DNA from: Polymyxa betae A26-41
Lineage: Eukaryota > Protista > Endomyxa: Phytomyxea
Assembly (NCBI GenBank): GCA_003693705.1
Contig: RBZT01000415.1
Span: forward strand, 124,001 to 188,000
Reading direction: 5' to 3'
DNA: 64,000 nt
The position numbers were made by a program, and so were the translations under genes. The notes below the pieces were generated by a model. It ran no database searches. It was not told where the DNA came from and worked only from the letters and a program-made list of their open reading frames with translations. Shown here piece by piece: positions 8,296 through 52,453 of this stretch; the stretch's first letter is position 1, and each line of letters starts with the position of its first letter.

Positions 8296-8751
8296 CGCGA
8301 TGGAAGTCGTTGATGGAAGGAAAAATATGGGATAGAGGCCGCGCTTGTCTGGCTTTGCTGCGACACTGTCGCGGGCCAAAGGGTTCTTAGAAAACTGCGG
8401 CCAGAGACCCCAACTCACTCTAGAAAGTGTTCACAACCGAAGTTGATTGAATAGGGATTGGTTTTGGCGAACTGGCGACAATATTGTGGTTGGGCCAGGG
8501 CGAAATGAAGAGTGGTTGTCCGAAAGTCTCCGAGGTCGAGATTCTGGTGCTGATCCTTGTGGATTAATCAGCCATAATTTGTCTGCCTTCACCGAGACCT
8601 TGAGGTCTATCCCGAAACCTATCATATGGTGGCCGGTTCGAACCACTTTTATTGTTCAATAGTTTTCGTTTTTTTTTCCTTATTGTCTGCTGAACTGATA
8701 TGGTTTGTTTGTAATATAATCAGTTAACTGAATCTTGTTGCCTTCAATATG

Positions 8752-9123
8752 TTAGAAGTTGCCTCCGGCAAAGTATGTAGCAAAAAGTTCTTCGACTGTA
8801 TCAGTCTCTAGAGCTTTCAAATGAACAGTACTGAGTTGCCGATTCAGCGTCCGTTTTCCAACGTTAATCTTGGCAGATTCGGCTCGCAGTGCCTGGAACG
8901 ACTCGTTAGCTGCCGCTACGAATGCTGCCAAATCAACACGACAACGCTTCTCCATCATCCACGTATGAAGAAAGGCACAAATCTCGGTGGTATAACGATG
9001 ATGAAGGCCGGTTGTTGCCATAAACCGCTGCAGTTCTTGTAAAGAAACAGTACCATCGCCATCGTTGTCTATGGCTGCAAACGCGTGCGACAGCAGCTGT
9101 CGTGATTGTCGCCCACAGCTCAT
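8752..9123 (-). CDS. Small EF-hand protein (5' end uncertain)
   Basis: FAAIDNDGDGTVSLQEL is a canonical EF-hand loop; a degenerate second hand (RVDLAAFV) follows. Confidence 0.65.
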   Translation of the reverse strand: MSCGRQSRQLLSHAFAAIDNDGDGTVSLQELQRFMATTGLHHRYTTEICAFLHTWMMEKRCRVDLAAFVAAANESFQALRAESAKINVGKRTLNRQLSTVHLKALETDTVEELFATYFAGGNF

Positions 9124-10055
9124 TTAAGGTCGTGTTTGCTGAGTCAATGTATCGTTCTCGTGCCTATTCATCGTCGTAATAGAGGCTATTCAGTGCCGTC
9201 GGAGTGAGCACTGCTTATTTAGAGCATTGAACTTTAGGCGTCGGTCCTCCATACGAGTGAAGCTTCTACCTTGTTCTTTGCTGTACCGGGATCAGGTTCC
9301 GCCAAATCTGGATGAAATGTACAGAATATCTCAGGAACCACAACTATCAGCTTGCATAGATTCTAGATGAGGCGCACAGATTATCTCAGATACCTGAGAC
9401 GTTTAAAGCACGTGGGATCGTAGTGGGATTAAACGGTTAAAAAAAGCAGGCATAAGTTTCGCGAGTTATATTTGAAACTGTTTTTTATGAATACAAACCA
9501 TCTTCAAAACCTGAAGTCCCGAATCTTGCCAGCCTGCAATAAAGTAGTTTCCATTTGACTGGCTCTACTCGAGAAGTCACTATAATCGCTACAACCATTA
9601 ATTTACTACGTTTTTGATTGTTCGAACTTTGAAGCCATCATTTCATCAGACTACAATGAGTCCACGCTAGAAGAGAAAAATTCTATTCCCGAATTTGTTC
9701 TCCGAAAATTTTCTAATCCTGGGAACTCTTTCAGTTTATGTTCACAGGAAGAAAACCTTGGATTCTTAGAACTTTAGGATCCTACTCTGGAGGATGGGAA
9801 GACTGATTAGGGGTTCGATTGTCCTCACGTCCACAAATACTAAAACAGCCCCCCTTATTTGACGTATGGGTGCCCATACATAGAAAATCGCTGAGCCGCA
9901 AATACATTTAGGAGGCAGAATGTGCAGTCAACTCAAAGGCATTCCAACATCTAAAAACGAGAGAAAATAAACAGAAATCTTGAATACCGCCACGGAATGC
10001 GAGGTCCGTAGATCTGGAAATTTCTGCTGACCTACAAAGAAAATCTCGGTTCTCA

Positions 10056-12920
10056 ATGGCGTCAACATCAGCCATGGACGATCTCGACGAGCTTCCATTC
10101 GTCATCGACACAACTGGGACACCGGTTGACGTCACTTCAGCTGTCGATCGTCGCAAATCGACCATTTTTGTCCGCAATTTGCCGTTCGACTTCACCGACG
10201 ATCAACTCCAGCGAAAATTCGAATCAGTCGGCCCCGTAAAACGTTCTTTTATCATCACTGGGAAAAAAGCAAGCCAGGGCTCCAGAGGGTCAGTATGGGC
10301 ATATTCCTCATCAACTGAAGTCACTGATTGACCATAAGATTCGGCTTTGTTATTTACGCCGATGAGAACGACGCCCAGGATGCCATCAAACAGCTCCATA
10401 ATACCGAACTCGATGGCCGTAAGATCAAGGTCGAACTGGCTCGGACGCCGAGCGACGCCACATCAGCCGCTGGTACGCCCGCTCCCCGACGCCAACAACC
10501 GGTCCGCCGTCGGCAGTTCTCCAAGAAGAAACCGGCACCCGGGAATGAGAGCGTCGTCATCTTAGAAGGCATTGACCCGAAAGCGTCGCCCAAATTTCTG
10601 TAGGCTCTGCAATTTTTTTTTGTTAACGACCCTATTGCTAATGAAGCCCACAGAGAAAAGAAAGTAAGAAGATTCGGACCTGTATCGATCTTCGATTTCC
10701 CTGCGGCAGAATCCACGTCGACATGCAAAGTGGCGAGGATCACTTTCGCTTCAGCTGAAACGGCACGCAAAGCCGTTCGCAATCTGGATAAGAAGGCGCT
10801 GGTCGTCGAGGGGTCGGAGCCGATTCGAGCAGGCTGGGCCGATGGCAAATGTGCCCGCGTCATCTTGCGAAATATTCCCTTTAACTGCAAAGAGCCTCGA
10901 CTGAAAATCATCCTGAAGCAGATCGGCAAGGTATTCTTTGTTCTGTTTTCTTCTCCTGCCTGAAGAATTCGTTGTTCGTTTCTGCTTTCATTTTCTCTTT
11001 GCTGCCTTCGTTTGTTATCCTGTTCGAGTGTTTCGTTGCTAATCCGATAGATTGTCTTTCATCATTCTCATGCTTCCCGGAGCTGAATTTCTGAAATATC
11101 AACTTCAGGTGAAAGAAGTCCACCTGCCAAAAGATCCCGAGAAGGGTGATGACTGCAACAAAGGCTTCTGCTTTGTCCAATTCGAGCAGTTTGCTGACGC
11201 CGCCAAAGCCGTTGCTCAGGGCTCCGTCAAGCTTGGTAGTATTGCCTGTGATGGCGTAATCACAATGTTTAAACAATTTTTAGGTGGACGAACCGTGGCT
11301 GTAGATTGGGCTTTATCTAAATCCCATTATCTCTCGCATCAGAATGATGCGGAAAGCGATGCGCCATCGGATGGCGAGAATGACGCAGCATCCGGCTCGG
11401 AGTCAGAGCTTGATGTTGATGTCGCCGACGCCATCGAGCAGGCTGAAGTCAGTGATCAAGAAGGCTCAGAATGCAGTGATGAGGACGCCGTTGAAGTTGA
11501 AGAAAACGAGAATGATTCCGAAGATGATTACAGCCAAGACGATAGCAACGATGACGAAGAAGGCGAAGATGACAACGATGATGTTAAGCCCAAGCAGGAA
11601 CGAGCTCGATCATCTCGCGATGTTCAAGAACAGCGCTCAGTTTTCGTCAGAAACGTTCCTTTTGAAGCCAGCGAAGATGCTATCAAACAGCTGTTTTCGC
11701 GATTCGGGAAAGTCAAATCCGTCATGATTGTCATGGATCGTGTAAGATTCGTGTGCTCGCTTATTCAGATCGCTAACCGTATGTTAGGATATGCAACGTC
11801 CTAAAGGCAGCGCCTTCGTTCAGTTCGAAGATGCAACAGCTGCTTGGGAATCAGTGAAATTCGCGGCTTCTGGCTGGTCCGAACTTAATAATCGGACAGA
11901 CAAGACTCGTCTTTTCAAAACTGTGTCTGATCATGGTAATATTGTCTGGCTTCGATTTGGCTCTAGAATTTCTTGACACCGAATGTTTTTTTTTTCAAGA
12001 TTTTCTCGGAACTGAAACTTAAATAGGTCTGCAATTGGGCGGACGTACGCTTGATGTGACGTTAGCTGTTGATCGATCACATGCGGCCAAATTACAAGAT
12101 GAAAATGGCAGAACGAAAAAGGAAGACAAGAAGCAAGCCCATCTTGTCAAAGAAGGCTATATCAATGCCGAATCTTCAGCTGCCAAAGGTATGTCTGAGT
12201 CTCATGCAAGATGCCAATGGCCTCAAAGATTCACGATGGGTTCTCAGGTCTGAACAAGATCGAACTGGCGATGCGGTCGAAATTGTACAAAGAGACGACG
12301 AAGAAGCTGGACAACCCGAACTATATCATGTCGAAATGTCGTCTATCTGTGCATAATCTCCCAGACGATATCGATGAGAAACGTCTCAGGTTGATAACGT
12401 TGACGTTTTCGCCAGATTTCATTCTCATTCTGATTCATTAGGTCGTGCTTCACTCAAGCTGTGAAAGAGGCGATACCTGTTGCGAAACCCATCGTGAAAC
12501 ACTGCATAATTGTTCGGGACAAGAACACTCTTGGAAAGGATGGAAAGCCCAGGTTCTCTCAATCGGTTGAGTTATCGTTGTGGGCTAACAGTTTTCAGGT
12601 CGTTGCATTACGGATTTATCGAATTTACTGAGCATGAACATGCTTTGGCTGCATTACGGGCTCTGAACAACAAGCCGAACGGTCTGGGCCCAAAAACGCA
12701 TCGTCCCGTGATCATGTTTGCTGTTGAAGACATGCGAAAGTTGGCGTTGCGGAAGGCACGTCTAGCGAAATCACAGCAGAAAATGAGTCTGGGGCGACTA
12801 CAGAAACGCCTGAATGTGTCTGTGCCGAATCCCGCAAAGGGCGGCAAGAAAAGGAATCGTGATAGCAACCAGCCGCAGTCTGCAACTCAAAGGCCTAATA
12901 AGAAACGATCTAAAAAGTAA
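10056..12920 (+). CDS. NOP4: Nucleolar four-RRM protein Nop4/RBM28; multi-exon
   Basis: RRMs: TIFVRNLPF..RGFGFVIY; RVILRNIPF..KGFCFVQF..VAVDWALSK; acidic linker; SVFVRNVPF..KGSAFVQF; RLSVHNLP..YGFIEFTEHEHALAALRALNN..FAVED. Confidence 0.93.
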
Positions 12921-39680: not shown

Positions 39681-41260
39681 ATGTCAAATCAGGCCGAAAT
39701 TCCCGATTCTGAGATGTCAGCTGCCGAGCTAAAGCGTTTGCAGAAGGAAGAACGTCGCCGGCAGTTTCAGGCGTCTCGCCCGGATTTGGTTGGGAAGACG
39801 AAGCCCGGCAAAGCTGAGCGTAAGTCGGCAACGAATGAAGCAAAATCCCCTGCTGTCGAATCACAAACGAAAGATTCGAAGCGAAGATCTCCAGACGCTG
39901 TGGTCAAAGCTGATGGTAGTCGTAATAAATCTGTTCTCGTGTCAAACCAAGTCGACAAAGAGAATCTGGAACGAAAACCAACAAATACCTGTCGAGGCTT
40001 ATTCGATCATCTCCCTTCTTACAAAAAGTTATCGTCTTCGGCATTGCATATTAAAATGGGTGCAGCTCATGATATTCATCCTACTTTTTTGTCGCTTGGG
40101 TTGTGTCTAGCAAAGCAAGTGCTTACTGGTAAGTCTTCTGTCAGATCGTTGGACAATCTAGTTGATCTCTATCTAGGAGCAAACTCTAGATCGCTTGCTT
40201 TATTGAACTCGATAAAGCAGTTACTGGATGGCTATGAATGCCCTGCTGAAAAGAACTTCTCTCGTGATTTTGAAGCAATCTTGGCCAGGCATATCGCCTT
40301 CATCAAGAATATCACGTTAGTGGACTGTTTGCCCTCCAGACTGCCTCTGATTTTACGCTCAGTCCTCTATCGGTTGCGATGAAAAATGTGGCAACTGCTA
40401 TCAGTTCCGCCGTTTCTAAACTTGATCCTATGATTGCGCATTCGCAGGTAAAATATACCTTTCTGCTAAGAACTGGAGTTCCTATTGTTTTGCAGGCGAA
40501 ACGCGAACTCTTTGAATTCATTGAAAAATACTCTGACGAACGTATAGTCTTCGCTATAAATGCTATTGCTAAATTATCAGAAGACAGGATTAAAGATGGC
40601 GAGGCTATCATGATCTACTCGAGGTGAATATCCGAAAACATTATCACAATTGTCCCCAACAATTTCCGTAAAGGTGCCATTTGATTGAGCAGATCATCAT
40701 CAACGCTTACAACAAAGGCGTCGTGTTTCGCGTTATAGTCGTGGATTCCAGCCCATGTCTCCATGGCCGGCGAACGCTTCGAAGATTGATTCGGGAATGT
40801 CCTGGACTGAGCTGTTCCTATGTTTTGATCCAATCCGTGACCTTTGCCATGAAAGAGGTTTCGAAAGTGTTCTTGAGTGCCACTGCTATGATGTCGAACG
40901 GCGCTGCTCAAGGTCGTGTTGGCACTGCAGTCATTGCTGTTATGGCGCAGACCTATCATATACCTTGCATAATGGTCTGTGAAAGTCGAAAGTTCTCAGA
41001 AAATGCTCAGGTATTCGGAACCTTTTAATTATGCAGCATGTTCATTTATTCTTGAAAATTAGGTCAATGCTATCACCAGAAACGAACTTTGCGATCCAGA
41101 GCCGCTTCTGCATGGGAAGCTTCGAGATATGCCTGGTTTAAGCATATTAAATTTGGCTTATGATATAACCCCTGCGCATCTGATTACCATGGTCATTTCT
41201 GAGGTTGGCTGCATTCCAGCAACAAGCGTGCCTGCTGTGACTCGTGAGTTTCATTCCTAA
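39681..41260 (+). CDS. EIF2B4: Translation initiation factor eIF2B delta subunit; multi-exon
   Basis: LQKEERRRQ, LFDHLP, IHPTFLSLG, GANSRSLA, FRVIVVDSSP, SKVFLSATAMMSNG..RVGTA, CESRKFSE, LNLAYDITP..SEVGCIPATSVP. Confidence 0.93.
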
Positions 41261-43838: not shown

Positions 43839-45696
<1,858 letters not shown>

Positions 45697-45881: not shown

Positions 45882-48450
45882 ATGAAATTCGGTAAATCTA
45901 TCAGGTCCTGGATAACACTTCGGTTCGATGCCATCAAACTGACATTTATGAAGGCTTGAAGCCAATCTACCATGGAACACCCGCTGGACCGATTACTACT
46001 TGAACTATAAATATTTCAAGCAGCTGATCAATCAGCTAGCTCAATTCAGTATATAACCATTTATTTAAAAAATTGACTGACTAATTTATACATGTCAGCG
46101 CCTGATCAGGAAGAAAAGGCGAGAGAAGCGATCGCGGGCAACTGCCAGAGCAAATTACATCGAAAAATTTCGTTGCCTTATATAGAATCCGAATCGGATG
46201 TTAATGGAATAGACGAGAGAAAGTTTAACGATGGTTTGTAAATTTTAACAACTTGATGTCTATCGCTAAATTCATTTAGACAAAAAATCGCAAAGTATTC
46301 AACGCACGGGGAGCGAGTTGAAGTTCAAACTTGAGACATCGTCTGACTTTCGATGTCGTTACTTTTTGGAAGAGTTCCGGCGAGAATTTGTCAAGATCGA
46401 TCTGTTTTGTGGCAATAGTTTGGCCAGTATAAAGAAGAGAATTGATACTGCACGAGATGATCCTGAACGAATCCGAAAATCTCTGTAATTCGTGTCTTTG
46501 TGAGTTCTGGTACACTTCCTTATTTTTGGAATCAGATTATCTACAACATTGCTCATGATCCGCTTGGAACAATTTATTATTATGAATTTTGCCGGCCTTG
46601 ATAAAATTGTCAAAAAGTGGGTTGTCGGACTATAAAATACTGGGAGTTTAACCATTTTTCAGGTTTGATAAAATTATCGGCGGTAAGGAGCCGTATCCGA
46701 ATAGCTATAAGTATTCATCTTCCATGAAACAAACTACCACATTTCTCATTTGCTGTACATCATAGGCGGATATTAGATGAAACGAGCCCTCGTGTTGCTA
46801 CACAAAAGCATCATCATTTAAACACACTTGCAGAAATTCGAGCTCTTGTAGCCGAAGAAATGGTACAGTTTGACTTCAGCACATTTCTCGGGTAGAGTTC
46901 CCATGTTTACAGATTAAATGCGGACCTTCGTCAGCGCTTGAAGAAGACGAAGCTACTCAAAAGGAACTTGACGAAACTGCCGTTGAAGATGACATTCCGA
47001 CCTTTACCCAGCTTAATATTGAGGCCCTGCCTCCCGCCAGCGTCACTCGGATGAGGATCGTTCTTGGCACGGATGCGCTTGGTTTTAATATGACTGTTCC
47101 CGTCGTTGTTGCTAAAGGAGCATTTGCGGGACCTGTGCTAGGTGATTTAACATTTTTCCGGCAATGGCCTTCGACGGAATGGTTGCCGTTGTCATCCTGT
47201 AATCTAAATGCTCATTTGGTGTAGGAGTTACATCGGCGCTGCACGGAAATGAACTGAACGGGATTCCGTTGATCTTCCGTCTTATTCGAGAACTGGAGGT
47301 TGAATACCTGAATGGGACTGTGGTCGCCATCCCAGTTCTCAATCCTCCCGGATTCTTAATGCATCAGCGTGGCTTCCATGATGGCCAAGACCTCAACAGG
47401 CTGTTTCCTGGAAATCCTAACGGAAACTGCGGCCAGGTTTGGGTTTTCAGTATTTTTATCAACAAAAGTTTGAAAAGGCATTTAATTATTAAAACGGGCC
47501 TTTAGCAAACTAATTTTGCCTTTCTGTACAGGTCTATGCGTATAATGTTCTGAACATAATTGTACGAAAATTCAACTATCATATTGATCTACATACTGCC
47601 AGTTTTGGTCGTGTCAATTCCTTGTACGTTCGTGCTGATATGAACAATCGCATTACACACCAGATGGCATTACTTCAAGAACCTCAGATTATTGTACACA
47701 ACACTGCACCAGATGTGAGTACTGATTTCCATTTGATTCGGGTTTATCAACTATAATGCAGGGTTCATTAAGATCGGCTGCTATGAATCTGAACATTCCG
47801 TCAATTACTGTGGAAATTGGAGACCCTGTAAGTGCAACATTTTTTCTCTTTCTAACTTTAGGTTGGGAAAGGTCTCTCCATTAGCTTTTTTTAATTCCAT
47901 CATTGCTGCAGTCGAGAATTCACCGCAGATTCGTTTCGTCGGCGCTGTTGGGCGTTGAAAACATCTTACATTCCCTTCATATGGTGATTAGGGAAGATCC
48001 TGAACCAAATTCCGAAGTCACTGTGCCAACAAGTAATGGTCATGATCTTTCATCCTAAGTCATCCTCACGATTGCTTACAGTTTGCGCCCGATCATTTTG
48101 GATATTCGCTAAGCACGGCGGGTTATTAACGGTGCGACCTGAGATAAACACATGGGTTGAGAAAGGCCAGGTAATGTGAAACGTTTTCGCTTCGTTTTTG
48201 CTTATCGTGCTGTGAAGTTCCTTAACGTCTCTCTTGCTAGTGCTTTCACATGAGTATTTATATAGCTTTTTAGGTGATTGCCCAAGTTCGCAATGTATTC
48301 GGCGACATCACCGCCACGTACCGGGCGCCTCTTGATGGAATCGTGGTTGGGAAATCTGTCGATCCCGTATGCTCTACTGGTGATCGCGTTATCCATTTGG
48401 GTGTTGTTGAATCGTCATTTCCGGCTGTTGTTAATGACGGCCACACTTAA
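45882..48450 (+). CDS. SPX domain fused to succinylglutamate desuccinylase/aspartoacylase (AstE/AspA, M14) family hydrolase; about 13 exons
   Basis: Introns 45905-45953, 46049-46098, 46234-46279, 46485-46535, 46617-46662, 46711-46765, 46863-46912, 47142-47224 keep one frame: MKFGKSIR..RWTDYYLNYKYFKQLI..FLEEFRREFVKIDLF..LEQFIIMNFAGLDKIVKKFDK (SPX), acidic linker, then SALHGNELNG..DLNRLFPG..IDLHTASFGR..ITVEIG. Confidence 0.9.
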
Positions 48451-48688
48451 TTTCAAGGGTTAAGGCTATTTCAACGCAAGGCCTTTTATCTTCATCGACA
48501 ATTTCTTCAGCCATTTATAAACTGATTATATTCGGTTATGCGGTTCTTCAGGTGAATTAAAATCTAATCCTGCCCAGTCGATGGAATCTATTCACGTTAC
48601 CACTCATGTAACGTTTCTGAATTGGGTCCCCACATTTCCATTTGGAGATCAACTGTAGAGGACTTCATATTGAAATACTGTCGATTCT

Positions 48689-51600
48689 ATGAGGGCTTTA
48701 CAGACCTTACCGGCTTTGCAGGGTTGGGTTCGAGACCTGCAGGACGCAGCGAACAGCGAGGAGTTTCAAAATTTGATAGGTCACATTGAGCAGTGGACCC
48801 GCCGTAGGTTTTTAATGTCAGACCATTATGGTAGCAACAATATGGGTTTGTAGGAGCACATGATGAACTGGGCAAAGACCAATTGAGAGGAACCGTTCCC
48901 ATTTTGCTCAATGAAGCCGCTGTTGAGCTCTTCAATCTTTCAGTTTATAAAGGAGAATCACTCTCGGTGTCTGCAAAAGCAAAAAGTAACTTCCTGCGAA
49001 ACGTTGTTTGTAATCAAGCCTGAACACTTGGATTTGATAGTTCGCTCAGCCGCTTGCTCACTACTAAATCTGCCATCAAACGATGATATGAGTTGTAATG
49101 ACTCTTGGCTTCGGATACACTACTTCACTGCTGCAGCATGGCATGATGCCAAAGATTTCGAGCAAGCTGAACTTTTTTTACAGATTGCAATTGAGAGTCG
49201 CCTTTTGACCTCCGATTCGCGCGAGCTGCCACCTGAGATTCGAGAGATTGCTTTTAACATTTACAGCTTGCGATCAGATAACGTTGTTAGATCTAGCGTC
49301 CTTAACTTAACCGCTCATAGCTATACTGCAGTTTTGGGCCATGGACCGACAACCAGACGCAAAATTAATGGCTTTGAAAGCTTTGAAGAACTTGGATCTC
49401 TCAGCAGCAGTATGGCTCCACGTAAAACTTTATAATAAAGGTAAGACAGACGCCAATGTTTTCGTTTGAATATTCGTTTAATGCTTTGTCTAGGAGTAAA
49501 ATTGTATCAAAGTTCCTCAATGGATAAAGCGGCCGAATGGCTTAAAATGGTAAGTAAGCGATTGTGTCCGAGCTTCATTTTGACACATAGCACAGAGCCT
49601 TGAAGCATTAGCAAACGAAACGTCCCATCCTCAAGCAGAAGAAAAGCGAAGTCGGACGCTTCGGGCTCTCTCTTTAGCTCTGAAAGCATCCAATAAATTC
49701 AACGAAGCTTTGCAGATAATTGATCGTTGTCTTGAATCTGGAAGCAACGATGTGGATAGTCTGTATCTGAAAACTGAACTGCTTATCCGATTGGAGGTGG
49801 GTCATCTGACTCCCCTTGATGTTTTAACATGTTGCTTGTTCAGAAATATGACAACGCTTCGGATTGTCTTCTTCAGACTATTCGCCATTCAGGATGCGGC
49901 CAAAAGATGTAATCGGTTTGCTTCTGGAAAATCGATCATTGAATCTTTTAGGGGAGTGGCATTATGCCAGTTATTCAAAGAGGCAGGCCAACCGATGAAA
50001 AGTATTTTAGGCTACAACGAACTTTTAGTTAAATTTCCGGAATCTTCAAGATTAAAGATTTTGAAGCTTCGGTGCTCATTTGCAACCGACGATGTCGAAG
50101 CAGGCGCGCAGATAGCTGACCAGGGTAAAAGAACGTCTTTGTGCAATTCTTGTTGGCAAACTGGTATTCATTGTCCAAGTCATATCTGATCATTTATCCG
50201 CCCGGAGAGAACTCAGCGATGAAGAGATAGAAGAATTTCGGAATGTCTTGAACAATGTCGCCCTTCATTTTTTCGAGGTGGGACACTTCGCAATTTTGCC
50301 TTACAGCTGAGTTCCTAAAGATCCGAATATTTCACTCCTGTTCCGAATGGATTGCAAGAACCGAGCGATTAGCTATGTGCAGACAGGGTGATAATAAGAG
50401 CATCTATATGTGTAGATGCGCTTTGTCGATAGCGGAAGTTGAACAAGGAAACACAAGTCAGGACCATTCCAGCTTTAGTATGAAAACCTGATTTGTTTGT
50501 AGATGAGGCTCTTCAGTGTGCGTTGAAAGCCGATAGTCTGTGTCCTCAATTGAGCCTAGCGAAATTGGTTGCAGCTCATTGTTATATAAACCTTAACGAT
50601 CCGGAATCAGGTATGCTTTCAACTAAGCGAAAGCAATCATATCTTAAACTGGAACAGCCACACAGCGCTTGAAAGATGCATTCAGTTGTCACGAGTTTGA
50701 TCGCAAATATTTGTCCATAGTTCTTAGCCAGAGCATAAAAGTATATATGGACTGAACAAAATGGTTATGATTTCACCCTTTTATTAGGCTAATTTTTCAG
50801 AATGTGCTGCATTATGTATAGAAGAGCTGCTTTCTTCAAAGACAGATCCTTCCGATCAGGTTGTAGGGTTGAGCAATCAATGGTCTTCCTGATAGATTTA
50901 GGTGACGTTTCTACAATGTGCTGTCGACTTGCAATACAAAATCGCTTGCTCAAACTCTGAAAGGTTACAAGGAATTATCAGCGTTTGTTTGATTCAAAAT
51001 CTGTTTCACAGTCCTGAATCTGGCAATTTGCAGCAAGCATTGAACCGTATATGCCAACATTTACGTTCCGCTATCCACCTTAGTCAGGAGAGGCATTTGG
51101 AAGCTTCGACGAGTCCAAGTGCCTTCGCAGATGTTAAAAGAGATGCAGATTGGTTTGGGAAAATTGCATGGAATTCTGGGTAACCCTATATTTCTTTTGG
51201 TTGCCATTTTTAAAATTAAAATTTTCTAGGATCCTTTGCTCAAAAAATAAGCTTATGCTGGAATGTTCTGAGTTCTTTCACATATCGGCAGTTTTTTGTC
51301 AGGTTTGCTCTGGGTTTACATTCCTCCATTGCAGATAACTATCAGTATAGATGATTCTAGGAGAAAATGATAGCGATACATGTAACCGGTTATTAATAAG
51401 CTTATGTATGAGCGGTTCTGCAGTGATGCAGCATTTATCGCGATTGCAGCAAAGCCCAAAATTCGGAAGCGATTCCGAGAACCTATGCAATTTTTGTCAA
51501 AATCGAATTCGCGAATTTCATGTTGCTGCGAAATCTACGCTGGGGAATGGTCTGTTGAATAACCTGTACCCAATTATTCATATTCTTGAATTACAAGTGA

Positions 51601-52297
51601 AGCTTATTCTTGGGGATCCTAACATTGATATCCACGTCCGGGTCAGATATCTTCTGAGTTTATGTCCCGGGTCTAATAATGAGCTCTTTAGAATGCTGTT
51701 AATATTCCCGGATGGAAAGCCACATTATTTGAAGAAATTGCCTCTATTTGCTTGATGCCACCTTTTCTTAGGCGTGATGGTATGCCGATTTACCACGAAT
51801 CGGACTGACTTTCAATACGATTTTTAGTTGCAGTCTCTGCTTTGCGGAGCTTGTTGTCAATGGAAATGGCACAAAATCAACATCAAGGACTAACTCTCAA
51901 CATCGAACACATTTCGAAAAATATTCGCCAATTAATAACTCTATCTGATAACATTGATAGACAGCTTCCTTTCTTTGAGCAAGCACAGAGTTTTGTCTTA
52001 CACATTGCAAGTTCAGCTACCTCATACCCAAGATTGGAAGCTCAGTGGCTTGTTTCCCGATCGTGGAATAATGGAGTCATCGCATACAGGTACTATCTAT
52101 CGCGAAACGTAACATTTTTCCTTCTCACAACTGCTTTTAGGGCAGGAAGTTGGGAAAGCGCAGAAATGTGGATGTCGAAGTCTATCCAATTGTCCAATAT
52201 GTTCGGTGATAGCTGCACCAGTAACCAAGAGGAGATGATAAGGTCGCATGCATTTGTTCTCTCAAGACTGCAACAATACTCAAAAGCTGCGAAATAA
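48689..52297 (+). CDS. ZIP4: Meiotic TPR protein ZIP4/SPO22/TEX11; multi-exon
   Basis: AAVELFNL, VRSAACSLL, AAAWHDAKDFEQAE, LYNKGV..AAEWLK, DWFGKIAWNSG, C-terminal YPRLEAQWLVSRSWNNG..AEMWMSKSI match the TEX11/ZIP4 pattern. Confidence 0.8.
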
Positions 52298-52453
52298 ATT
52301 GCCAGCCAAGTAATAACCAATATTAAGTAGATTAATTAGAAACATGGATCTTCTTTACCGGAATCCTGCTTGACACAACGATTCTTGCAAAAGCTCAACT
52401 TCTCCATAGAAATCTCCAGAAACTGTTGTAAGACCATGAAGGTCCTTTGTTGC

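What the first reader, a model, noticed from the sequence alone, without database searches (positions are those of the whole stretch)
45882..48450. SPX phosphate-sensor domain fused to an AstE/AspA (M14 zinc) amidohydrolase: candidate inositol-pyrophosphate-gated enzyme
Seen: eight consecutive GT-AG introns (46-83 nt) join exons that the ORF track misses or shows only as fragments into one frame. It begins MKFGKSIR-LEANLPWNTRWTDYYLNYKYFKQLI, continues FLEEFRREFVKIDLF and LEQFIIMNFAGLDKIVKKFDK, passes an acidic linker, and runs without a stop into LHGNELNG / DLNR / DLHT / TVEIG. Established: MKFG, YxxxK and KIxKKxDK form the SPX basic surface that binds inositol polyphosphates and pyrophosphates, and all of these residues are present. 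HxxE..H plus a later Glu are the Zn ligands and catalytic base of AstE/aspartoacylase M14 enzymes, and all are intact. The SPX fusions I know are with EXS, MFS, RING, VTC, ankyrin/GDPD and CitMHS domains; I do not know an SPX-M14 fusion. Inference: a hydrolase whose deacylase or carboxypeptidase activity is switched by cellular phosphate status, linking phosphate sensing to amino-acid or nitrogen metabolism.
Basis: partly seen in the sequence, partly recalled or inferred. Interest (0 to 1): 0.92.

Follow-up and report, generated by a model that had tools for sequence, protein, structure and literature searches.

The report
Phosphate-sensor-fused zinc peptide hydrolase
A root-parasitic protist carries a real, ancient and apparently unstudied gene that joins the eukaryotic phosphate-sensing SPX domain to a zinc hydrolase; its closest bacterial relatives travel with an uncharacterised peptide-making enzyme that the protist also has, which points to a small-peptide pathway controlled by phosphate status.

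Summary
All exons tile 584-aa Plasmodiophora and Spongospora orthologues in order, and Plasmodiophora shares both linker introns. All six SPX ligand residues and the M14 Zn/catalytic set are intact. The fusion is not unique. It forms one clade across early-diverging fungi, Pneumocystis, Fonticula, an amoeba, Rhizaria, labyrinthulids and a euglenid. Databases hold it only as automatic annotation, and I found no paper on it. It fails the AstE, aspartoacylase, EutE and CphZ membership tests. New here: its closest bacterial kin (~50% identity) co-occur with an unnamed circularly permuted ATP-grasp ligase (69 of 72 loci or genomes checked; background 1 of 150 Bacteroidota), often with a GshB-like ligase. 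This genome encodes two copies of that ligase. An invariant Arg-rich pocket suggests an acidic C-terminal residue. A C-terminal DGH tail tracks with SPX. Best reading: an inositol-pyrophosphate-regulated hydrolase of the ligase's peptide product. Gating, its direction and the substrate are inferred. No RNA reads were available. The scan's notes showed no earlier report of this fusion.

The parts
45882..48450 (+). Whole gene, 14 exons, 586 aa SPX-M14 fusion
45882..45904 (+). Exon 1, SPX start (MKFG); intron 1 has a weak donor and is not shared with P. brassicae
45954..46048 (+). Exon 2, SPX; Y26 (46006) and K30 (46018) of the phosphate-binding cluster
46099..46233 (+). Exon 3, variable SPX insertion (low pLDDT in the orthologue model)
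46280..46484 (+). Exon 4, SPX helices
46536..46616 (+). Exon 5, SPX; K176, K179 and the first two bases of K180
46663..46710 (+). Exon 6, end of the lysine cluster (K183)
46766..46862 (+). Exon 7, last SPX helix; both flanking introns conserved in P. brassicae
46913..47141 (+). Exon 8, acidic linker (10 D/E in the first 30 aa) and first strands of the enzyme
47225..47436 (+). Exon 9, Zn ligands H311 (47242) and E314; carboxylate clamp R353, N362, R363
47532..47714 (+). Exon 10, Zn ligand H396 (47592); invariant R402, N404, R409
47762..47827 (+). Exon 11, invariant pocket R440 (47771) and catalytic E454 (47813)
47912..48032 (+). Exon 12, last helix of the M14 domain
48082..48170 (+). Exon 13, start of the C-terminal beta (biotinyl/lipoyl-like) domain
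48274..48450 (+). Exon 14, rest of the beta domain, DGH tail (48436-48444) and stop

Best explanation
One cytosolic protein. SHOWN: an N-terminal SPX domain with a complete inositol-phosphate-binding surface is fused to an intact two-domain zinc amidohydrolase of the AstE/AspA branch of M14 (EutE/CphZ-like fold). SHOWN: this hydrolase subfamily is tied, by operons and genome co-occurrence in bacteria, to an unnamed ~480-aa circularly permuted ATP-grasp ligase, often with a GshB-like ligase; this protist has two copies of the first ligase. INFERRED: the enzyme hydrolyses the amide or isopeptide bond of the ligase's product, a small non-ribosomal peptide or oligomer that probably ends in Glu or Asp. 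Zn polarises the carbonyl, E454 activates water, R353/N362/R363 clamp the terminal carboxylate, and R440 with R402/R409 binds an acidic side chain. INFERRED: InsP8/InsP7 binding to SPX switches activity, so the ATP-consuming ligase and the hydrolase are not run as a futile cycle. The likeliest direction is activation at high phosphate by release of an autoinhibited state, possibly involving the SPX-linked DGH tail, so that the peptide builds up in phosphate starvation and is mobilised on refeeding. Odds by step: fusion real 0.97; SPX binds InsPs 0.85; binding controls activity 0.65; substrate is the ligase product 0.6.
For: Gene model and orthology. Transcript-derived fused proteins in other eukaryotes. 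SPX fold Z 16.1 to XPR1 and Z 15.4 to InsP6-bound Vtc4 SPX; enzyme Z 33-35 to 3cdx and EutE, Z 28.5 to CphZ. All six ligand residues kept strictly in 38 of 57 aligned homologues. PPIP5K and an IPK-family kinase are in the genome. Bacterial context: 47 of 80 loci have the ligase within 4 kb, 32 a GshB-like gene, 24 both; 22 of 25 further genomes carry the ligase elsewhere. Among 150 random Bacteroidota only one has the ligase, and it alone has the close M14, about 1 kb away. Ligase fold. Ligase in this genome at 57% and 52% identity, and in Plasmodiophora, Mortierella, Entomophthora and Mucorales. Pocket Arg R440 in 112/113 fusions and 79/79 bacterial kin, where EutE has Asp. DGH tail in 104/113 fusions versus 1/79 bacterial kin. 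Precedent: CphZ, an M14 of this fold, cleaves the dipeptide derived from an ATP-grasp-made polymer (PMC9974463).
Against: No biochemistry and no RNA for this organism. The model does not fix the SPX-enzyme orientation (pTM 0.61) and I had no coordinates, so the role of the tail is unexamined. In eukaryotes ligase and hydrolase are unlinked and their co-occurrence was only spot-checked. This genome has three SPX-less M14 paralogues, any of which could be the ligase's partner. Mucorales showed the ligase and a HutD-M14 fusion, and no SPX form among the top 120 hits. The GshB-like ligase was not found in this genome. The Arg pocket is shared with a more distant M14 subfamily, so it does not single out a substrate. 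The bacterial loci include many related Saprospiraceae and are not all independent.
Confidence: 0.45

Rival explanations
1. InsP-regulated general N-acyl-Glu/Asp deacylase or protein deglutamylase. It acts on N-acetyl-Asp/Glu-type metabolites or on RimK-made glutamate tails, independent of the circularly permuted ligase.
For: The Arg-rich pocket fits acidic residues. The genome has two RimK-family ligases. The more distant M14 subfamily lies beside rimK in 2 of 5 genomes tested.
Against: The close bacterial kin are linked to the circularly permuted ligase rather than to RimK. Scores are far below the AstE, ASPA and EutE cut-offs.
Confidence: 0.2
2. The module makes and breaks glutathione or a close analogue: the ligase is an alternative gamma-glutamyl ligase, the GshB-like gene adds the third residue, and the M14 enzyme recycles it under phosphate control.
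For: The nearest solved fold of the ligase is the ATP-grasp GshA-type enzyme 3k1t, then glutathione synthetases. The partner resembles GshB. Seven of 16 ligase-bearing bacteria showed neither GshA nor GCS2.
Against: This genome already has canonical eukaryotic glutamate-cysteine ligase and glutathione synthetase. Two ligase-bearing bacteria have canonical GshA and seven have GCS2. The GshB-like genes score below all cut-offs. An Arg pocket does not suit a terminal Gly or Cys (inference).
Confidence: 0.13
3. SPX binds inositol phosphates but acts as a docking, localisation or turnover module (for example pairing with other SPX proteins). The catalytic rate is not gated.
For: Low pTM and a variable-length linker; the linker's acidity is not conserved (median net charge 0). 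SPX-SPX contacts are known in VTC (PMC10167327).
Against: A tail motif appears in step with the SPX fusion, which hints at intramolecular coupling.
Confidence: 0.2
4. Two adjacent genes, or a mis-joined model.
For: No RNA reads for this organism. Retention of either linker intron would give a stop within 10-18 codons.
Against: Colinear orthologues, shared linker introns, intron-free contigs that encode the fusion, transcript-derived fusions, and no AATAAA in the linker.
Confidence: 0.02

Closest known systems
SPX-enzyme fusions: Vtc4 (SPX-TTM polyphosphate polymerase), Gde1 (SPX-ankyrin-GDPD), SPX-RING ligases; XPR1/PHO1 transporters
   Same: N-terminal SPX with the full basic surface; structural match Z 12-16; sequence match of a family member to the Gde1, Vtc3, Vtc4 and XPR1 SPX domains.
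   Different: The output is an amide hydrolase, not phosphate transport, polyphosphate, glycerophosphodiester or ubiquitin chemistry. It is absent from the SPX architectures listed in PMC8717665 and PMC13153306 (both plant- and alga-centred).
EutE/DoeB N-acetyl-DABA deacetylase (6TWM) and structural-genomics kin 3CDX, 3NA6
   Same: Closest fold (TM by target 0.82; Z 33-35), M14 domain plus beta domain, HxxE..H and Glu.
   Different: About 20% identity; 68-70 bits against a cut-off of 402.7; Arg where EutE has Asp, 14 residues before the catalytic Glu; SPX domain and DGH tail added.
CphZ cyanophycin dipeptide hydrolase (8EIN/8EIP; PMC9974463)
   Same: Same fold and R/N/R carboxylate clamp. Works-like analogy: an M14 partner of an ATP-grasp product.
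   Different: 16% identity; Ala, not Asp, two residues after the third Zn ligand; basic rather than acidic pocket; different partner ligase.
AstE succinylglutamate desuccinylase and aspartoacylase
   Same: Same Pfam family (PF24827) and catalytic set.
   Different: 17-27 bits against cut-offs of 170-305; weaker structural match (Z 16-20).
Unnamed bacterial M14 subfamily of Myxococcota, Saprospiraceae and Bacteriovoracia
   Same: About 40-57% identity to the eukaryotic enzyme domain and the same invariant residues; the eukaryotic clade nests among them.
   Different: No SPX, no DGH tail; encoded in operons with ligases; itself uncharacterised as far as I could find.

Membership tests
SPX domain | Profile match (PF03105) | tested here: met
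   Orthologues 34.5 and 40.9 bits against a cut-off of 27.8; window exon 2 alone E 0.0018; joined window protein not searched
SPX domain | N-terminal hairpin plus long three-helix bundle | tested here: met
   Model of the Spongospora orthologue: Z 16.1 to 8tyu, 15.4 to 5ijp, residues 1-232
SPX domain | Phosphate-binding cluster (Y, K, K) and lysine surface cluster (K, K, K) | tested here: met
   Window Y26, K30, K180; K176, K179, K183; same motif spacing as the InsP6-bound Gde1 SPX; cluster definitions from own knowledge
SPX domain | Binds InsP6/InsP7/InsP8 and controls the fused output | not testable with these tools
   Needs binding and activity assays
AstE/AspA branch of M14 (PF24827) | HxxE..H Zn triad, catalytic Glu, R/N/R carboxylate clamp | tested here: met
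   H311, E314, H396, E454, R353, N362, R363; roles as described for CphZ in PMC9974463
AstE/AspA branch of M14 (PF24827) | M14 alpha/beta domain plus small C-terminal beta domain | tested here: met
   (orthologue model)
EutE/DoeB | TIGR02994 equivalog cut-off | tested here: not met
   68-70 against 402.7 bits
EutE/DoeB | Asp in the pocket 14 residues before the catalytic Glu | tested here: not met
   Arg in that column; the role of that Asp is inferred, as the EutE paper is not held
AstE succinylglutamate desuccinylase | TIGR03242 / PRK05324 cut-offs | tested here: not met
   22-27 against 305.65 and 170 bits
Aspartoacylase | PRK02259 cut-off | tested here: not met
   17-19 against 180 bits
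CphZ/AotO | Over 30% identity to AbCphZ and the Asp-binding D181 | tested here: not met
   16% structural identity; Ala at the His+2 position; criteria from PMC9974463
Circularly permuted ATP-grasp ligases (partner protein) | Permuted ATP-grasp fold | tested here: met
   pLDDT 92; best matches 3k1t, glutathione synthetases, GspS, YgiC; TM 0.59 to GshA-type and 0.52 to CP_ATPgrasp clusters; no Pfam family above cut-off
Circularly permuted ATP-grasp ligases (partner protein) | ATP-dependent amide formation and its substrates | not testable with these tools
   Needs assay

The most novel reading that the evidence does not exclude
An undescribed two-enzyme pathway (unnamed ATP-grasp ligase plus M14 hydrolase), shared by myxobacteria, Saprospiraceae and many microbial eukaryotes, makes and degrades an unknown acidic peptide. 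Early eukaryotes placed its breakdown under direct inositol-pyrophosphate control through an SPX fusion with an autoinhibitory DGH tail. This would be a phosphate-gated, cyanophycin-like nitrogen or carbon store, and a direct link from the phosphate sensor to amino-acid metabolism.
Probability: 0.3. Interest if true: 0.92.

Novelty: new variant of a known kind. Interest (0 to 1): 0.76.

Why it matters
The SPX outputs I know handle phosphate itself (transport, polyphosphate, glycerophosphodiesters) or regulate proteins. A soluble SPX-gated amide hydrolase would extend inositol-pyrophosphate signalling to peptide and amino-acid metabolism. It would also give a small single-chain enzyme with a simple readout for the open question of how SPX transmits ligand binding to a fused domain. 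The family is kept across several eukaryotic supergroups, including reduced parasites (Pneumocystis, plasmodiophorids) and Glomeromycotina, which suggests a function that is hard to lose. The ligase link turns an orphan into a testable pathway and flags a conserved protein family (~50-60% identity from bacteria to protists and fungi) that has no Pfam model.

Tried and rejected
The genome-wide SPX family search missed this gene because introns split it. Five paper searches for the fusion and one for the operon returned nothing relevant. The Iyer 2009 ATP-grasp survey and the EutE structure paper are not held, so a prior mention of the operon there is not excluded. Eukaryotic gene clustering of ligase and hydrolase: none in four genomes. 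A GshB-like orthologue in this genome: only RimK-level hits. The ligase as a plain GshA replacement: weakened. Acidic linker as a conserved InsP mimic: not conserved. Atlas feature search of the fusion gave only bacterial M14 clusters at 0.83. One search's residue table was off by one and is replaced. Its intron pair at codons 509/511 is probably an artefact of my matcher and was not counted.

Full report
Source. The assembly has 1001 contigs and 27,085,814 bases. This matches the Polymyxa betae draft of 1,001 contigs and 27,085,946 bp (PMC6328671), and the nearest proteins come from Spongospora and Plasmodiophora. The organism is therefore almost certainly this plasmodiophorid.

Observation. 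From the sequence I built a 14-exon model, ATG 45882 to TAA 48450, with 13 GT-AG introns of 46-103 nt, 586 aa and no internal stop. The exons were joined only in that script, to count stops and place motifs. All searches were exon by exon, or used stored orthologues; the joined search step was left out. Pfam gives SPX on exon 2 and AstE_AspA_cat on exons 9 and 10. Every exon aligns in order to the 584-aa Spongospora (P0199) and P. brassicae (P0212) proteins and together they cover positions 1-584. P. brassicae has introns at eight of the same positions and phases, including both linker introns, and its gene lies among the same neighbours, katanin p60 and a SPO22/ZIP4-like gene. RNA for this organism could not be checked. 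Fused proteins from transcript assemblies of Aplanochytrium, Ploeotia and Paulinella and from intron-free contigs show that the architecture exists as one reading frame.

Distribution. A search with exon 9 alone returned long proteins whose N-termini are SPX. A full-length member retrieved the fusion from Zoopagomycota, Mortierellaceae, Glomeromycotina, chytrids, Saitoella, Pneumocystis, Fonticula, Balamuthia, Hondaea and the plasmodiophorids. In a tree of 166 catalytic domains all 66 SPX-bearing rows fall on one side of a branch (SH-aLRT 90, quick method, midpoint root, redundant Mortierella/Coemansia rows and half the bacterial loci left out). That group lies among bacterial proteins; a HutD-fused eukaryotic group is separate. 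One old fusion event is the simplest reading, though I did not test it formally. These proteins carry automatic names only. No paper in the library joins SPX with this enzyme family, and two SPX surveys do not list it (PMC8717665, PMC13153306). The library lacks most subscription journals.

Anatomy. The AlphaFold model of P0199 (pLDDT 87, pTM 0.61) has SPX at 1-230, a short linker, an M14 domain and a beta domain from about 500. The SPX part matches XPR1, Vtc4 and Gde1 SPX structures at Z 12-16; the enzyme matches 3CDX and EutE at Z 33-35 and CphZ at 28.5. The window protein has Y26, K30, K176, K179, K180 and K183, and 38 of 57 aligned homologues keep all six strictly, which argues for a ligand site under selection. 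The genome encodes PPIP5K and an IPK-family kinase. The Zn triad H311/E314/H396, the base E454 and the clamp R353/N362/R363 are present and nearly invariant. So are R402, N404, R409 and R440. R440 aligns with an Asp of EutE, which suggests an acidic rather than basic terminal residue; this is inference. A DGH tail ends 104 of 113 SPX fusions, 1 of 79 bacterial kin and none of 8 HutD-clade proteins. The enzyme fails the curated cut-offs of EutE, AstE and aspartoacylase by a wide margin.

Partner. Eighty loci of the closest bacterial kin come from Myxococcota, Bacteroidota, Bdellovibrionota, Planctomycetota and others. Within 4 kb, 47 have a ~480-aa gene with no Pfam match, 32 a GshB-like ATP-grasp gene and 24 both. 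Of 25 genomes without the adjacent 480-aa gene, 22 carry it elsewhere; eight such loci were not checked. As a control, one of 150 random Bacteroidota has it, and that genome alone has the close M14 (59% identity), about 1 kb away; about 40 others have only a distant (~30%) M14. The 480-aa protein folds confidently as a circularly permuted ATP-grasp ligase nearest to the GshA-type 3K1T, glutathione synthetases, GspS and YgiC. This protist has two copies, 57% and 52% identical to the bacterial protein, on contigs C940 and C150, besides canonical glutathione enzymes. The ligase also occurs in Plasmodiophora, Mortierella NVP85 (the same strain as an SPX-M14 hit), Entomophthora and Mucorales.

Mechanism. 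The simplest account is a ligase-hydrolase pair like cyanophycin synthetase and CphZ (PMC9974463): the ligase spends ATP to make an amide, and the M14 enzyme cleaves it. Eukaryotes put SPX on the hydrolase. From my own knowledge, InsP8 rises with phosphate and ATP, SPX domains often relieve inhibition on binding it, and cyanophycin accumulates in phosphate-starved cyanobacteria. By analogy I favour accumulation of the peptide in starvation and InsP8-triggered release on refeeding, with the DGH tail as a candidate inhibitory element. None of this was tested. The main weaknesses are three SPX-less M14 paralogues in the same genome that could serve the ligase, the absence of the GshB-like gene, spot-checked eukaryotic co-occurrence, and an unresolved domain orientation.

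Verdict. This is a new variant of a known kind: an SPX-enzyme class that is widespread and annotated automatically but apparently unstudied, with a newly linked orphan ligase that makes its substrate findable. Interest 0.76.

Noticed in passing
G000:C940:~8400-10100 (+) and G000:C150:555-2270 (-) (L109, L110): Two copies of an unnamed circularly permuted ATP-grasp ligase, 52-57% identical to bacterial proteins and about 65% to P. brassicae P0385. The family has no Pfam model and over 3,600 homologues were counted.
   Followed up: yes
L023-L102: Conserved bacterial operon of the ligase, a GshB-like gene and the M14. In about 10 Bacteroidota loci it is flanked by arginine decarboxylase, agmatinase and a gene I read as deoxyhypusine-synthase-like (that label not Pfam-tested), hinting that a polyamine could be part of the product.
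   Followed up: partly
P0024, P0025, P0036, P0039, P0044, P0517: A second eukaryotic architecture, HutD cupin plus the same M14 subfamily, in chytrids, Absidia and Acanthamoeba; a separate clade without the DGH tail.
   Followed up: partly
G000:C351:63350-64590 (L012:3846-5093): SPX-less M14 paralogue with a hydrophobic, signal-peptide-like N-terminus; it seems to lack the first Zn-binding His (read from ORFs, splice model not built).
   Followed up: no
G000:C720:298200-299550 (-) and C239:20000-20960 (-): Two more SPX-less M14 paralogues; the C720 copy keeps the HGNE motif.
   Followed up: no
G000:C839:154000-154437 and 253919-254350: Two RimK-family glutamate ligases about 100 kb apart on one contig.
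   Followed up: partly
window 43900-45696 (+) and 48500-52300 (+): Katanin p60 ends 185 nt upstream and a SPO22/ZIP4-like gene follows. P. brassicae has the same genes around its orthologue in a rearranged order; an eIF2B-subunit-like gene lies at about 40000-41250.
   Followed up: partly
L023-L102 M14 genes: 32 of 79 bacterial kin have His in place of the clamp Arg of the DLNR motif, unusual for M14 enzymes.
   Followed up: no
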